Assembly: GCA_965655095.1 (NCBI GenBank)
Contig: OZ296648.1
Coordinates: 157,480,001-157,544,000, forward strand
Direction: 5' to 3'
From: Haplodiscus bocki
Taxonomy: Eukaryota
Length of the DNA stretch: 64,000 nucleotides
In this document: piece after piece, positions 6,901 through 10,379 of the stretch
Layout of the letters: each line of letters opens with the position of its first letter
Numbering within the stretch: position 1 is the first letter of the stretch
The notes under the pieces: model-generated
The model's database searches: none
What the model saw: the letters and a program-made list of their open reading frames with translations, nothing else
Told to the model about the DNA's origin: nothing
Translations under genes and position numbers: made by a program

Positions 6901-7673
6901 GTGTTTCAGTCTATGCATAAAACCAACAACAATGTGAACGGTTAAAACTTCTCCTTTTAGAAACAGGGAAACTAAAAGTTTCTGTAGAAAGTATGGCAAT
7001 AAAAAACTGGTCATTTACTTACTGTATAACCACTACATCCGGTTTTCTCGAAAGATCAATACGAAGCTAAAAGTTTTGCTAATGGCCACAATGCAAAACT
7101 GTTTATGTTTAATGGGAAGCGTAACCATGCGTTGTGGGTAATGGGACTTACTGCTCACCGGAGGAGGATGCTAACACCTTTTGAAGAGCTTTAAGGGAGA
7201 AAGCCGTCAAGAACAACCAATATTTTTCAACCCAAACTAACAAAACTTTCTTACTCGGATAAAGTTAGTGTTACCAAGAATCTGCAAAATTTCTAGTGTA
7301 CATCATGGACAACGGAAAACGAAAATTGAAACACTTCGCAAGAAGCTCACTGGAACGTTTACTCATGACAAAACCGTCAGATTCTGACTGCTCCACTCGT
7401 TTTTTGTGATCAAGTATTGAAACTGTCTGATACCACCAGCATTTTTTCCGCCCTCCAAATTTTTGAAATGCCTTTCCCAAAAAAGAAAGCGCTTTTTCTG
7501 GAAAGTACTGTTTGTCTTCATGTAAATATCGATTTTTCCAGATTAAAAATTTTTCTGATTTTTCACCAAAATATATTAATAAAAATGGCACTCGGAGAGC
7601 GCAGATCCCGCGAAAGCCCTTGATCTTTCCCTCGCCAAACAAACAAACAAACAGACGAACAAACAAAAAATTT

Positions 7674-7747
7674 TGTCCACACAGAGGTTCCAACTCTCGA
7701 CCCTCGCGTTTTTTGCACAATGCTCTTACCGACTGAGCTATAGGGCC
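7674..7747 (-). pseudogene. tRNA-like unit 1 (Ile(AAT)-type body; U33 lost; B-box damaged)
   Basis: Minus strand GGCCCTATAGCTCAGTCGGTAAGAGCATTGTGCAAAAAACGCGAGGGTCGAGAGTTGGAACCTCTGTGTGGACA; the T-loop has TTG instead of TTC. Confidence 0.75.
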
Positions 7748-7815
7748 GTACTCATCTGATTACTATTATGAGATTACTATTATCAGATTACTATTATCAG
7801 ATTAACAAAAAATTT

Positions 7816-7889
7816 TGTCCACACAGAGGTTCCAACTCTCGACCCTCGCGTTTTTTGCACAATGCTCTTACCGACTGAGCTATAGGGCC
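7816..7889 (-). pseudogene. tRNA-like unit 2 (identical to unit 1)
   Basis: Same sequence as 7674-7747, including loop CAAAAAA and the GTTGGAAC B-box lesion. Confidence 0.75.
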
Positions 7890-7957
7890 GTACTCATCTG
7901 ATTACTATTATGAGATTACTATTATCAGATTACTATTATCAGATTAACAAAAAATTT

Positions 7958-8031
7958 TGTCCACACAGAGGTTCGAACTCTGGACCCTCGCGTTTTTAGC
8001 ACGATGCTCTTACCGACTGAGCTATAGGGCC
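7958..8031 (-). tRNA. tRNA-like unit 3, Ile(AAT)-type body with anticodon AAA
   Basis: GGCCCTA-TA-GCTC-AGTCGGTAA-GAGC-A-TCGTG-CTAAAAA-CGCGA-GGGTC-CAGAG-TTCGAAC-CTCTG-TGTGGAC-A. D, anticodon and T stems pair; two acceptor-stem mismatches; A and B boxes intact; T6 downstream. Confidence 0.55.
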
Positions 8032-8236
8032 GTAATTATCTGATTACTCTTATCAGATTACTATTATCAGATGACTATTATTCTGGATCTGATTGAAATC
8101 TTGATCCAATCAGTATCTCCAGATAACTGTTATCAGGATCCAACAGGATATCCTGGATCGTAAACCAGTCGTTGATATACATTACCTCCTATTTTGAGAA
8201 ATCTTGCTAACAAACAAACAGACAAACAAAAAATTT

Positions 8237-8310
8237 TGCCCACACAGAGGTTCGAACTCTCGACCCTCGCGCTTTTAGCACAATGCTCTTACCGACTGAG
8301 CTATAGGGCC
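8237..8310 (-). tRNA. tRNA-like unit 4, anticodon AAA (loop CTAAAAG)
   Basis: A box TAGCTCAGTCGG and B box GTTCGAACC intact. One G-G mismatch in the T stem and two acceptor-stem mismatches. Confidence 0.4.
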
Positions 8311-8378
8311 GTACTCATCTGATTACTATTATGAGATTACTATTATCAGATTACTATTATCAGATTAACAAAAAATTT

Positions 8379-8452
8379 TGGCCACACAGAGGTTCGAACT
8401 CTGGACCCTCGCGTTTTTAGCACAATGCTCTTACCGACTGAGCTATAGGGCC
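8379..8452 (-). tRNA. tRNA-like unit 5, best-folding copy, anticodon AAA
   Basis: GGCCCTATAGCTCAGTCGGTAAGAGCATTGTGCTAAAAACGCGAGGGTCCAGAGTTCGAACCTCTGTGTGGCCA. Single C-T acceptor mismatch, perfect D and T stems, anticodon stem with two G-U pairs, discriminator A, then AAATTTTTT. Confidence 0.6.
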
Positions 8453-8520
8453 GTAATTATCTGATTACTATTATGAGATTACTATTATCAGATTACTATT
8501 ATCAGATTAACAAAAAATTT

Positions 8521-8594
8521 TGGCCACACAGAGGTTCGAACTCTGGACCCTCGCGTTTTTTGCACAATGCTCTTACCGACTGAGCTATAGGGCC
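8521..8594 (-). pseudogene. tRNA-like unit 6 (as unit 5 but U33 lost, loop CAAAAAA)
   Basis: A/B boxes and T stem intact; the anticodon loop lacks the invariant U33. Confidence 0.7.
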
Positions 8595-8799
8595 GTAATT
8601 ATCTGATTACTCTTATCAGATTACTATTATCAGATTACTATTATCCTGGATCTGATTGAAATCTTGATCCAATCAGTATCTCCAGATAACTGTTATCAGG
8701 ATCCAACAGGATATCCTGGATCGTAAACCAGTCGTTGATATACATTACCTCCTATTTTGAGAAATCTTGCTAACAAACAAACAGACAAACAAAAAATTT

Positions 8800-8873
8800 T
8801 GTCCACACAGAGGTTCGAACTCTCGACCCTCGCGTTTTTAGCACAATGCTCTTACCGACTGAGCTATAGGGCC
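8800..8873 (-). tRNA. tRNA-like unit 7, anticodon AAA
   Basis: A/B boxes intact and loop CTAAAAA. One T-stem mismatch and two acceptor-stem mismatches. Confidence 0.4.
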
Positions 8874-8940
8874 GTACTTATCTGATTACTATTATCAGAT
8901 TACTATTATCAGATTACTATTATCAGATTAACAAAATTTT

Positions 8941-9014
8941 TGGCCACACAGAGGTGCGAACACTCGACCCTCGCATTTTCAGCACATTGCTCTTGCCGAC
9001 TGAGCTATAGGGCC
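8941..9014 (-). pseudogene. tRNA-like unit 8, most diverged, anticodon GAA
   Basis: GGCCCTATAGCTCAGTCGGCAAGAGCAATGTGCTGAAAATGCGAGGGTCGAGTGTTCGCACCTCTGTGTGGCCA. T arm and B box damaged (TTCGCAC); downstream T-tract only T4. Confidence 0.7.
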
Positions 9015-9251
9015 GTACTCATCTGATAACTCTTATCAGATTACTATTATCAGATTATTATTATCCTGGATCTGATTGAAATCCTGTTCCAAAATCCGAC
9101 CAGTAGTTCATGAGAAACAGTTATCCGGATCTCAGATCCGGATTTCAATCCGGATCACGCCCAACTTTGAACTCGGTCTTCCTATGATCATTACCTCCCT
9201 ACTCACCAAATTTCATCAAAATCCGACCAGTCGTTTTTGAGAAATCCTGCT

Positions 9252-9286
9252 AACAAACAAACAAACAAACAGACAAACAGACACAC
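9252..9286. repeat. (CAAA/CAGA)n microsatellite of the HINE-like element; related tracts at 7636-7667, ~8209-8230 and ~8772-8793
   Basis: aacaaacaaacaaacaaacagacaaacagacacac read directly; GTTT/GTCT on the minus strand. Confidence 0.9.
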
Positions 9287-10379
9287 GAAGGTGATTGCAA
9301 TATCCCGCTTTTCGCGGGATAATAAAAGTGGAAAAGGCACTTAGAAGAATTCATATCGGTTGATGGCGTTTGTATGGTAAATTTGCCACTTTCTGGCGAT
9401 TAAAATTTTTCAAATTCAAAACCGGACGCGTGCAGCAAGTCTGACGTTGTCAATTAGCAAACACGTTAAGAAACGTTCGGTTTCAGTGTTTTGATTGAAG
9501 GATTTTGTTTCCATAATAAAAATGTGGGCTGATAATAGTAGTTTTTTGTTTATTTTGTACAGATATCAGCTACAGAAAAACTGGAAAGGAAAATACGAGG
9601 TTGATCGGATCAAAATTGTAGTAGCAAGATTTACAATAGGCTTTTTATGAGATTTTTGTTGTGCAGCAACCCTTCGAGCAACTCACAAAGGATTAAAGAT
9701 GAAAACCTTCATATTTTGGCAGGATTCCATATTCATTTGAACTTTTGAGTAATTAATTTATAGAATTTGTCTGTGCTGTAGAAAGTGAACTGTTTTGATC
9801 TAAAGATCAAATTATATTCTTCATCAGGTAACGTTTTTAAATTGATGGAGCGAAAAAATGCCACAAAATTAACGGCAGATTTGGTGGGGCAAAATAACAG
9901 TGATAAAACTAACCTTGGTAAATCATGGTGTCAAAACAACCAATGATTCACTCAAAGAAGAGGGGCAAAAAATTTCAGTCAGCGAACTAGCAACTATATT
10001 TGACATATCTGAGGTTCAGCATGCCAACTTTACTATTACATTTGTAAAAGCTTTTGTTTCCTTGTGAATTTTTTTCTCCGAAAAACTGAACAGTGTATGT
10101 TTTGAGGTTTCGTGCGGCGCGGGAATTCTATTGTCTTTTATTACTAGCGTTTTCTTTTTTCGAAGGACTTCTATTGAATTGAGAATGCTTTTATGTCGAC
10201 GTGTTGTTTTTGAGGCGTCGACTGAAACGAGAAAGCCCTTATGTCGATGTATGTTTTTCTGCTTTCTTTTGCTTTTTTGTTCTCACTTCATTCTTTTTTG
10301 CGCAAAGTTGGCGAGATCTACTACAAAAAACTTTCGGAAAACGCTCGAATCTCAGCGTAGATAACATATAGTGGGATGA

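What the first reader, a model, noticed from the sequence alone, without database searches (positions are those of the whole stretch)
7958..9014. Anticodon-shifted tRNA: Ile(AAT)-type body carrying AAA (four copies) or GAA (one copy), i.e. Phe anticodons
Seen: the anticodon arm is T(C/T)GTG-CTAAAA(A/G)-CGCGA in units 3, 4, 5 and 7, the loop is CTGAAAA in unit 8, and CAAAAAA in units 1, 2 and 6. No unit has AAT. Established: the body (GGCC..TAGCTCAGTCGGT.AGAGC..TCGTGCTAATAACGCGA.GGTC..GGCCA) is typical of animal tRNA-Ile(AAT). Functional tRNA-Phe normally uses GAA, and A34 in Ile(AAT) is deaminated to inosine by ADAT2/3. Inference: a single T36->A change fixed before amplification may have made the RNA non-chargeable, and thus harmless to amplify. 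Alternatively it created a potential Ile/Phe mis-decoder or a source of tRNA fragments. The T stem in units 3, 5 and 6 (CAGAG/CTCTG) still pairs perfectly.
Basis: partly seen in the sequence, partly recalled or inferred. Interest (0 to 1): 0.7.

Follow-up and report, generated by a model that had tools for sequence, protein, structure and literature searches.

The report
Transposon-borne decayed tRNA-Ile copies (anticodon AAA)
The eight "tRNA-Phe(AAA)" genes are decaying copies of the host's isoleucine tRNA gene, carried as the internal tandem repeat of a jumping element with about 1,200-1,350 copies, so the odd anticodon marks one founder mutation and not a new decoding system.

Summary

The Ile(AAT) origin is supported. 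The units differ from the host's own tRNA-Ile(AAT) at 7-12 of 74 positions. They are only 65% identical to the host's tRNA-Phe(GAA).

The array is not a tRNA gene cluster. It is the central repeat of a 1.75-kb non-autonomous rolling-circle element of the Helentron/HINE type (7577-9322). Exact-pattern counts give 1,348 copies of its 5' end and 1,194 of its 3' end in this 1.5-Gb, probably coral, genome.

- **AAA anticodon:** it is a founder mutation. The AAA arm occurs 2,335 times exactly, against about 15 dispersed AAT arms on the same body.
- **GAA in unit 8:** it is a private A-to-G change in a degraded end unit.
- **Selection:** 87 distinct family units show no sign of selection for the cloverleaf (83.0% of cells paired, 82.9% after shuffling).
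- **tRNA scores:** the window's units score 27-56 bits on the Rfam tRNA model. Host tRNAs score 63-67.

Five units keep the host's A and B boxes and a T6 terminator, so Pol III transcription is possible. It could not be tested, because no RNA run was available.

The scan has already reported this family elsewhere in the same genome. I found no published description of tRNA-derived HINE repeats.

The parts
7577..9322 (-). Whole non-autonomous Helentron-type (HINE) element; its 5'->3' direction is that of the tRNA-like units (window minus strand)
   Evidence: Similarity to 30 other genomic copies starts and stops sharply at about 7577-7582 and 9322. The last 6 nt of the family's 3' end (CTAGTT) are not recognisable in this copy.
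9302..9320 (-). 5' subterminal inverted repeat ATCCCGCGAAA (9320-9310) with its adjoining complementary repeat GCGGGAT (9308-9302). They form a hairpin 2 nt from the 5' terminus.
   Evidence: The DNA fold gives -8.7 kcal/mol, z -3.07, and 0 of 200 shuffles fold as well. The 31-nt 5'-end pattern has 1,348 genomic matches at up to 1 mismatch.
9252..9283 (-). Left-flank microsatellite, (GTTT/GTCT)n in element orientation
   Evidence: Tandem Repeats Finder: period 4, 8 copies. A microsatellite in the left flank is a listed HINE feature (PMC7492417).
9015..9251 (-). Rest of the left flank, including 14-bp ATCAGATTACTATT-type repeats next to unit 8
   Evidence: Shared by 28-30 of 30 family copies; TRF rows at 9021-9065.
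8941..9014 (-). Unit 8, first in element orientation: loop CTGAAAA (GAA), 12 differences from host Ile, 4 unpaired stem pairs, T4 terminator
   Evidence: Rfam 30.9 bits; cloverleaf -9.1 kcal/mol. The family's first unit normally reads CTAAAAA-TGCGA.
8800..8873 (-). Unit 7: loop CTAAAAA, 7 differences from host Ile, 3 unpaired pairs
   Evidence: Rfam 39.9 bits.
8521..8594 (-). Unit 6: loop CAAAAAA (U33 lost), T stem C-G restored
   Evidence: Rfam 47.7 bits.
8379..8452 (-). Unit 5: the best-kept unit, loop CTAAAAA, 7 differences from host Ile, 1 unpaired pair. Identical to at least 44 other genomic copies.
   Evidence: Rfam 56.3 bits; 100%-identical hits on nine chromosome-scale contigs.
8237..8310 (-). 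Unit 4: loop CTAAAAG, 8 differences, 3 unpaired pairs
   Evidence: Rfam 35.5 bits.
7958..8031 (-). Unit 3: loop CTAAAAA, keeps the host-type C28 (TCGTG stem), 7 differences
   Evidence: Rfam 50.8 bits. The host-type stem with AAA occurs only 39 times genome-wide.
7816..7889 (-). Unit 2: loop CAAAAAA, T loop TTGGAAC (C56 lost), 9 differences
   Evidence: Rfam 26.7 bits, below the gathering score.
7674..7747 (-). Unit 1, last in element orientation: identical to unit 2
   Evidence: Rfam 26.7 bits.
8032..8236 (-). Long spacer (the 279-bp step) between units 4 and 3: 14-bp repeats, a segment like the left flank, and a microsatellite. With two 142-bp steps it makes a 563-bp higher-order repeat.
   Evidence: Spacings of 142/142/279 recur in the window and in other copies; TRF 279-bp period.
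8595..8799 (-). Second copy of the long spacer, between units 7 and 6
   Evidence: Same as above.
7636..7667 (-). Microsatellite at the junction between the last unit and the right flank
   Evidence: TRF: period 4, 8 copies.
7605..7615 (-). 3' subterminal inverted repeat TTTCGCGGGAT, the perfect complement of the 5' one
   Evidence: the repeat finder pair I16: 11 nt, 100% complementary, arms 7605-7615 and 9310-9320. The 30-nt 3'-end pattern has 1,194 genomic matches.
7588..7602 (-). 3' palindrome GCGCTC-TCC-GAGTGC between the 3' inverted repeat and the terminus
   Evidence: Present as a 6-bp stem in the minimum-energy DNA fold. On its own it is weak (z -0.33 for the 64-nt stretch).

Best explanation
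The units are pseudogene-like copies of the host's tRNA-Ile(AAT) gene. They became the central tandem repeat of a non-autonomous Helentron-type rolling-circle transposon (a HINE).

A founder copy of the repeat had already acquired T36-to-A (anticodon AAA) together with about five other substitutions. Every later copy inherited them. Two processes then multiplied the unit:
- Transposition of the element, presumably by the Rep/helicase of an autonomous relative. This step is inferred.
- Expansion and contraction of the array inside each copy, seen as a 563-bp higher-order repeat of two 142-bp steps and one 279-bp step.

The variants in this window are later neutral damage. CAAAAAA has lost U33. 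CTAAAAG has changed position 38. GAA in unit 8 is an A34-to-G change in the already degraded first unit.

The units most likely play no part in translation. Some may still be transcribed by RNA polymerase III, because five of the eight keep the host gene's A and B boxes and a T6 terminator. Transcription is not shown.
For: - **Ile origin.** Host Ile(AAT) genes were recovered from this genome: a tandem array on C5 at 79.5 Mb and a singleton on C1. They form a perfect cloverleaf and score 65.6-66.8 bits. The window's units differ from them at 7-12 of 74 positions. Host Phe(GAA) is 65% identical, Lys 70%, Trp and Tyr 61%.
- **Mobile element.** Similarity to 30 other copies starts and stops sharply at about 7577 and 9322. 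The flanks outside differ in every copy. The 5'-end pattern matches 1,348 times (680 forward, 668 reverse) and the 3'-end pattern 1,194 times, on all large contigs.
- **HINE anatomy.** The anatomy fits the features listed in PMC4067079 and PMC7492417: a 5' subTIR 2 nt from the end with an adjoining inverted repeat, a left-flank microsatellite, central tandem repeats, a perfect 11-nt 3' subTIR, a 3' palindrome, T's at both boundaries and no target-site duplication. The genome holds at least 147 Helitron_like_N matches, many in open frames of over 2,000 aa.
- **Founder mutation.** There are 2,335 exact AAA arms against 20 AAT arms on the same stem, 5 of them in the host array. Among 109 units in 31 copies, 93 read CTAAAAA, 11 CAAAAAA and only the window's unit 8 reads CTGAAAA. 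Contigs from a run labelled coral metagenome and from a run of another coded organism keep AAA (records 17 and 26).
- **Neutral decay.**
  - On 87 distinct units, 83.0% of cells are paired against 82.9% after shuffling (192 of 500 shuffles as high), and the covariation score is 0.042 against 0.043.
  - Pairwise diversity is 0.032 in the tRNA part and 0.044 in the spacer.
  - Cloverleaf energy is -9.1 to -18.4 kcal/mol against -24.4 for host Ile.
  - Rfam scores are 26.7-56.3 bits.
Against: - No autonomous partner with the same ends was identified. One candidate on C1 had a 5' end 7.8 kb upstream of a Rep match, but no matching 3' end follows it.
- The 3' terminus of this particular copy is degenerate.
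- Five units keep host-identical A and B boxes and a T6 run, so calling them dead rests on structure and population pattern, not on expression data. No RNA run could be examined.
- The T-stem pair 49-65 shows a full compensatory path: host G-C, then G/G in most units, then C-G in the most abundant identical variant. This could hint at some structural selection.
- GAA variants sit at about 24 loci, against 10-11 loci for the equivalent A-to-G changes at positions 35 and 36. This is a weak, unexplained excess.
- The diversity sample is biased, because the loci were chosen for holding a copy identical to unit 5.
- Host tRNAs of only five isotypes could be compared, and tRNAscan-SE isotype models were not available.
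Confidence: 0.85

Rival explanations
1. The units are transcribed by RNA polymerase III and act outside translation. They could be a source of tRNA-like small RNAs or fragments, or TFIIIC/Pol III binding sites that act on chromatin. This is compatible with the transposon origin.
For: u3-u7 keep an A box (TAGCTCAGTCGG) and a B box (AGTTCGAACC) identical to the host Ile gene, followed 3 nt downstream by T6. The most abundant variant has a restored 49-65 pair. The family supplies thousands of such units.
Against: There is no expression evidence. No listed run is on record as RNA, and the contigs laid cannot show transcripts. Pairing is not conserved beyond chance, and the tRNA part is about as variable as the spacer.
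Confidence: 0.2
2. The units are working tRNA genes with a shifted anticodon. They would be charged with Ile (Phe-to-Ile mis-decoding) or with Phe (an extra Phe decoder), and A34 might be edited to inosine.
For: ARAGORN calls five units tRNA-Phe(aaa). The best unit scores 56.3 bits. A35, A36 and A73 are three of the five yeast Phe identity elements (my own knowledge, not tested). Alloacceptor anticodon shifts are documented in eukaryotes (PMC3923123).
Against: The units sit inside a transposon with about 1,200-1,350 copies. All carry an unpaired 5-68, and most also an unpaired 49-65 or 2-71. They score 10-40 bits below host tRNAs. Three units lack U33, and two of these also lack C56; unit 8 lacks A58. 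There is no selection for pairing. The host has canonical Phe(GAA) genes of unrelated sequence. U36 belongs to the Ile anticodon, which the literature treats as an identity determinant (Senger 1997, cited in PMC3923123).
Confidence: 0.03
3. The units are a tRNA-derived SINE spread by retrotransposition.
For: A tRNA-derived head with Pol III boxes, high copy number and dispersal.
Against: The units occur as tandem arrays of 1 to 10 or more inside an element with subterminal inverted repeats and hairpins. There is no poly(A) or LINE-like tail and no target-site duplication.
Confidence: 0.02
4. The array is a local tandem duplication of a host tRNA gene cluster and is not mobile.
For: This genome does hold very large tandem tRNA arrays.
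Against: The same 1.75-kb unit with the same two ends is found on all large contigs in both orientations, each time with unrelated flanks.
Confidence: 0.01

Closest known systems
HINE / DINE-1-like non-autonomous Helentrons with central tandem repeats (Thomas et al. 2014, PMC4067079; Cg_HINE of Crassostrea gigas, PMC7492417; pearl and DTC84 of bivalves, PMC3879986)
   Same: A 5' subTIR with an adjoining inverted repeat, a left-flank 4-nt microsatellite, a central array of about 140-bp repeats of variable number, a 3' subTIR followed by a palindrome, T-rich boundaries, no target-site duplication, high copy number and dispersal in both orientations.
   Different: Here the central repeat is a recognisable, nearly complete tRNA gene with A box, B box and terminator. 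[quoted passage not shown] The Cg_HINE paper never mentions tRNA. The host appears to be a coral, not a bivalve or insect.
Alloacceptor anticodon shifts in nuclear tRNA genes (Rogers and Griffiths-Jones 2014, PMC3923123)
   Same: A tRNA body of one isotype (Ile) carries an anticodon of another (Phe) through a single anticodon substitution.
   Different: Those cases are syntenically conserved genes not flagged as pseudogenes. These are transposon cargo with damaged stems and neutral decay. An A34 Phe anticodon (AAA) is not a normal decoder, as far as I know.
tRNA-derived SINEs
   Same: A tRNA-derived, Pol III-type module multiplied to thousands of copies by a mobile element.
   Different: Spread here is by a DNA (rolling-circle-type) element carrying the units in tandem, not by reverse transcription of single units. 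There is no LINE-related tail, poly(A) or target-site duplication.
The host's own tandem tRNA-Ile(AAT) array (C5, about 79.5 Mb)
   Same: It is the source sequence: 62-67 of 74 positions are shared, including the D arm and most of the anticodon and T arms. That array also holds copies with mutated anticodons (ATT, AAG, AAC, AGT).
   Different: It is a 379-bp period at one locus with an AAT anticodon and a perfect cloverleaf scoring 66 bits. It lacks the element's flanks, its 14-bp spacer repeats and the six diagnostic substitutions.

Membership tests
tRNA-Ile(AAT) gene | Anticodon AAT | tested here: not met
   0 of 8 units. Positions 34-36 read AAA in seven units and GAA in one.
tRNA-Ile(AAT) gene | Body closest to the host's Ile(AAT) genes | tested here: met
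   62-67 of 74 positions identical. Other host isotypes sampled: Lys 70%, Phe 65%, Trp and Tyr 61%. Only five host isotypes could be sampled.
tRNA-Ile(AAT) gene | Intact cloverleaf and a score like host tRNAs | tested here: not met
   1-4 unpaired stem pairs per unit; -9.1 to -18.4 against -24.4 kcal/mol; 26.7-56.3 against 65.6-66.8 bits.
Cytosolic tRNA-Phe | Anticodon GAA and a body like the host's Phe(GAA) | tested here: not met
   GAA occurs only in the most degraded unit, u8. All units are about 65% identical to host Phe(GAA) at C4:12.60 Mb.
Cytosolic tRNA-Phe | Aminoacylation by PheRS | not testable with these tools
   Needs charged-tRNA-seq or an in vitro charging assay.
HINE (non-autonomous Helentron) | 11-15 bp subterminal inverted repeats, the 5' one 2-4 nt from the terminus | tested here: met
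   ATCCCGCGAAA at 9320-9310, 2 nt from the end, and its perfect complement at 7615-7605.
HINE (non-autonomous Helentron) | [quoted passage not shown] | tested here: met
   The 5' hairpin has z -3.07. A 6-bp 3' stem appears in the minimum-energy fold but is weak on its own.
HINE (non-autonomous Helentron) | Left-flank microsatellite and central tandem repeats | tested here: met
   Period-4 microsatellite at 9252-9283; 142-bp repeats with 10 copies.
HINE (non-autonomous Helentron) | Insertion at TT / T-rich sites without target-site duplication | tested here: inconclusive
   Family copies begin TT... and end ...CTAGTT, with variable A/T-rich flanks and no duplication. No empty site was recovered to fix the exact junction.
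HINE (non-autonomous Helentron) | An autonomous Helentron (Rep/helicase, with endonuclease) sharing the termini | tested here: inconclusive
   Helitron_like_N is present in at least 147 places, with long open frames. The one Rep match near a 5' end (C1:147.36 Mb) has no matching 3' end.
tRNA-derived SINE | Single tRNA-related head, LINE-related or A-rich tail, target-site duplication | tested here: not met
   Tandem units inside an element bounded by inverted repeats; no tail and no duplication.
Alloacceptor anticodon-shift tRNA gene | A functional, syntenically conserved tRNA gene whose anticodon changed isotype | tested here: not met
   Transposon cargo with neutral decay of pairing. Synteny across species could not be tested.

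The most novel reading that the evidence does not exclude
Thousands of transposon-borne tRNA-Ile-derived units with host-identical Pol III boxes are actually transcribed in this coral. The element would then seed the genome with active Pol III/TFIIIC sites and produce an A36 tRNA-like RNA. That RNA would feed small-RNA pathways or, in its best-kept and GAA-bearing variants, enter translation at a low level. The restored 49-65 pair and the roughly two-fold excess of GAA loci would be traces of selection on that RNA.
Probability: 0.1. Interest if true: 0.75.

Novelty: new variant of a known kind. Interest (0 to 1): 0.4.

Why it matters
For annotation: tRNA finders will report thousands of false tRNA-Phe(AAA) genes in this genome. 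There are at least 2,335 exact anticodon arms, and a loose Rfam first look gave about 138,000 tRNA-like candidates. Codon-usage or tRNA-pool analyses of this coral would be misled unless these are masked as transposon cargo.

For biology: this is a clear case of a rolling-circle-type DNA transposon adopting a whole Pol III gene as its internal repeat and carrying it genome-wide. It links three kinds of repeat: tRNA genes, satellite-like arrays and Helentrons. It also offers a natural test of what thousands of extra A/B-box sites do to a genome.

It does not indicate a change in the genetic code or a mis-decoding system.

Tried and rejected
- **tRNAscan-SE isotype models.** Not available. I compared the units with the host's own tRNAs instead.
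- **Host Phe(GAA), first attempt.** A longer pattern found two real Phe(GAA) genes on C4.
- **Expression.** The look-up of sequencing runs listed no RNA run. Read laying returned contigs only. They show that the same organism (X1, X2) and two other data sets (X5, X8) hold the units, but nothing about transcripts.
- **Ancestral AAT-bearing element.** The roughly 15 dispersed AAT arms on the element-type stem are no more than back-mutation plus one local duplication (C1:133.43 Mb) would give, so they are not evidence for an older AAT subfamily.
- **Autonomous partner.** A 5' end at C1:147361956 lies 7.8 kb upstream of a Rep match in the same direction. No 3' end follows within about 1.2 Mb, and such a coincidence has roughly a 1 in 10 chance on this contig, so I rejected it as evidence.
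- **Selection for the cloverleaf.** Not detected.
- **JGI metagenome contigs.** No exact match to a 28-nt AAA-arm pattern.
- **Literature.** Searches for tRNA-derived repeats in Helitrons or Helentrons, in corals or in satellites found no description.
- **SNORD109A hits in the long spacers.** At 24.1 bits they are below the 35-bit gathering score and are treated as chance.
Full report
**1. Observation**

The window has no N. On the minus strand lie eight 74-nt tRNA-like units: u1 7674-7747, u2 7816-7889, u3 7958-8031, u4 8237-8310, u5 8379-8452, u6 8521-8594, u7 8800-8873 and u8 8941-9014.

- ARAGORN calls u3-u7 tRNA-Phe(aaa).
- The Rfam tRNA model gives 26.7, 26.7, 50.8, 35.5, 56.3, 47.7, 39.9 and 30.9 bits for u1-u8, against a gathering score of 29.
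- Tandem Repeats Finder reports a 142-bp period with 10 copies and a 279-bp period over 7662-9065.

CTAAAAA is in u3, u5 and u7, CTAAAAG in u4, CTGAAAA in u8, and CAAAAAA in u1, u2 and u6. AAT occurs nowhere. The CAGAG/CTCTG T stem pairs perfectly in u3, u5 and u6.

Two corrections apply. The stated range omits units 1-2. Positions 34-36 read AAA in seven units, not four.

**2. Which tRNA is it derived from?**

I recovered the host's own genes from the same 1.5-Gb genome. The motif GTGCTAATAACGC occurs 332 times. Most hits are in one tandem array on contig C5 near 79.5 Mb, spaced at 379 bp and its multiples.

ARAGORN finds tRNA-Ile(aat) genes there, plus a singleton on C1 at 9.49 Mb. Their consensus folds into a perfect cloverleaf at -24.4 kcal/mol and scores 65.6-66.8 bits.

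The window's units differ from that consensus at 7 (u3, u5, u7), 8 (u4, u6), 9 (u1, u2) and 12 (u8) of 74 positions.

The host's tRNA-Phe(GAA) has two copies at C4:12.60 Mb and scores 63.3 bits. It is only 65% identical to u5. Lys(TTT) is 70% identical, and Trp and Tyr are 61%.

tRNAscan-SE isotype models were not available.

**3. What the array really is**

Unit 5 has at least 44 identical copies on nine chromosome-scale contigs. In 30 fetched loci the units again form short tandem arrays with the same 142/142/279 spacing.

Similarity between the window and these loci begins and ends sharply at about 7577-7582 and 9322. Outside those points every locus has unrelated sequence.

Read in the direction of the tRNA units, the element has the following parts:
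- TT, then an 11-nt subterminal inverted repeat ATCCCGCGAAA with an adjoining complementary GCGGGAT. Together they form a hairpin (z -3.07).
- A (GTTT/GTCT)n microsatellite and a left flank.
- The tRNA-like array.
- A right flank with the perfect complement TTTCGCGGGAT.
- A short palindrome GCGCTC/GAGTGC.
- In the family, the end CATTTTCTAGTT. This window's copy has lost the last six bases.

No target-site duplication is visible.

This is the anatomy that Thomas et al. (PMC4067079) and Vojvoda Zeljko et al. (PMC7492417) give for HINEs, the non-autonomous partners of Helentrons.

Exact-pattern counts give 1,348 copies of the 5' end (680 forward, 668 reverse) and 1,194 of the 3' end. The genome also holds at least 147 Helitron_like_N matches, many in open frames of over 2,000 aa. 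I could not link any of them to these termini.

**4. The anticodon**

Genome-wide exact counts:

| Pattern | Count |
|---|---|
| Element-type arm with AAA (ATTGTGCTAAAAACGCGA) | 2,335 |
| Same arm with AAT | 20, of which 5 lie inside the host C5 array |
| Host-type stem (ATCGTG) with AAA | 39, one of which is u3 |

A36 is therefore a family-wide founder substitution. It comes together with G5C, T21A, C29T, C66G and A68G in linear numbering. "A single change" is not.

The remaining loop variants also follow the family's architecture:
- The family's last units typically read CAAAAAA, and its first unit reads CTAAAAA with a TGCGA stem. The window shows the same layout.
- The window's u8 is that first unit plus a private A34-to-G change. 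Among 109 units from 31 copies it is the only CTGAAAA.
- Genome-wide, the GAA variant occurs 47 times at about 24 loci.
- As controls, the A-to-G change at position 35 occurs 14 times at about 10 loci, and at position 36 it occurs 26 times at about 11 loci.

GAA is thus a rare mutational variant with a weak, unexplained two-fold excess of loci.

**5. Are the units under tRNA-like constraint?**

I aligned 87 distinct family units and counted pairs on the cloverleaf.
- 83.0% of cells are paired, against 82.9% after shuffling. 192 of 500 shuffles reach the observed value.
- The covariation score is 0.042 against 0.043.
- Pair 5-68 is unpaired in 85 of 87 units, pair 49-65 in 76 and pair 2-71 in 51.

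Among units at 142-bp spacing, pairwise diversity is 0.032 in the tRNA part and 0.044 in the spacer. That sample is biased towards conserved tRNA parts.

The one structure-restoring event is pair 49-65. It is G-C in the host, G/G in most units, and C-G in the abundant identical variant. Overall the copies decay as neutral DNA.

**6. Could they be expressed?**

u3-u7 keep A- and B-box sequences identical to the host Ile gene. A T6 run follows 3 nt after the 3' end; in u8 it is T4. Pol III transcription is therefore plausible.

It could not be tested. None of the 24 runs that hold the stretch is on record as RNA, and only contigs could be laid.

Those contigs do show three things:
- X1 and X2 are the same organism, with 0-1 differences over the unique flanks.
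- A run labelled coral metagenome (X5) and a run of another coded organism (X8) hold the units at 3-7 differences per 70-80 nt.
- AAA is unchanged in both (records 17 and 26).

The run labels are my only basis for calling the host a coral.

On identity, the following rests on general knowledge and was not tested here. U36 is part of the Ile anticodon recognised by IleRS. The units have A35, A36 and A73 but lack G20 and G34 of the classical Phe identity set. Neither charging route is favoured.

**7. Comparison with what is known**

HINEs with satellite-like central repeats are well described (PMC4067079, PMC7492417). For pearl and DTC84 the authors state that complete pol III A and B boxes were not found (PMC3879986). 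The Cg_HINE paper does not mention tRNA.

Four literature searches found no description of a tRNA-derived central repeat in such elements.

Alloacceptor anticodon shifts are known for conserved genes not flagged as pseudogenes (PMC3923123). These units do not qualify.

**8. Earlier notes of this scan**

Other windows of the same genome have been read the same way.
- s1-376388 covers this same stretch.
- The follow-up to s1-376412 estimated about 1,500 copies, built from tRNA-Ile.
- The follow-up to s1-382650 called the units dead, freely mutating Ile copies inside a transposon.
- The follow-up to s1-382578 suggested a coral host.

I reached the element boundaries and the Ile origin before reading these notes. 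My counts agree with them. The finding is therefore not new to the scan.

**9. Verdict**

The Ile origin and the pre-amplification fixation are supported. The mis-decoder idea is not.

The finding is a new variant of a known kind: a HINE whose repeat is a tRNA gene. Its interest is moderate, and its main practical value is as an annotation warning.

Noticed in passing
L044-L060 (G000:C5:79.526-79.61 Mb): The host's tRNA-Ile(AAT) genes form a 379-bp-period tandem array with over 300 copies. Many copies carry the same body with mutated anticodons: AAC in at least 10 identical copies, and also AAG, ATT and AGT. Some also have A-box or T-stem damage. The host's own array therefore also holds anticodon-shifted, apparently decaying copies.
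   Followed up: partly
G000:C1:36,143,647-36,200,661 (not fetched): A run of about 57 kb of the same tRNA-like units on one strand ends in a single element 3' end at 36,200,632. It includes local sub-arrays with AAG (16 copies) and AGA (4 copies) anticodons. It looks like one element's central repeat expanded into a satellite-like block.
   Followed up: no
G000:C2:122,756,637-122,762,674 and C10:46,181,612-46,211,863 (not fetched): Two local clusters of eight units each carry the true Phe anticodon GAA on the Ile-derived body. Genome-wide, GAA sits at about 24 loci, against 10-11 loci for the matching A-to-G changes at positions 35 and 36.
   Followed up: partly
L033-L037 (G000:C1:133.43 Mb): An older, more diverged array of the same element-type units mixes anticodons AAA, AAT, AGG and AGA, with irregular spacing of about 300-600 bp. 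The AAT units there are five copies of one variant and look like a local duplication.
   Followed up: partly
whole genome G000: Very large tandem tRNA arrays occur at several loci (C7:23.68 Mb, C4:107.9-108.1 Mb, C11:32.1 Mb, C10:2.0 Mb). The loose first look of the Rfam tRNA search gave about 138,000 candidates. tRNA-like DNA appears unusually abundant in this genome.
   Followed up: no
G000:C1:157,478,051-157,479,121 (about 1-2 kb before the window start): Another copy of the same element lies in the opposite orientation, with at least three units identical to u5. Two further 5' ends lie at C1:157,458,275 and 157,458,947.
   Followed up: no
window 8085-8141 and 8648-8704 (minus strand): Weak matches to SNORD109A (24.1 bits, gathering score 35) lie in both copies of the long spacer. 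They are most likely chance.
   Followed up: no
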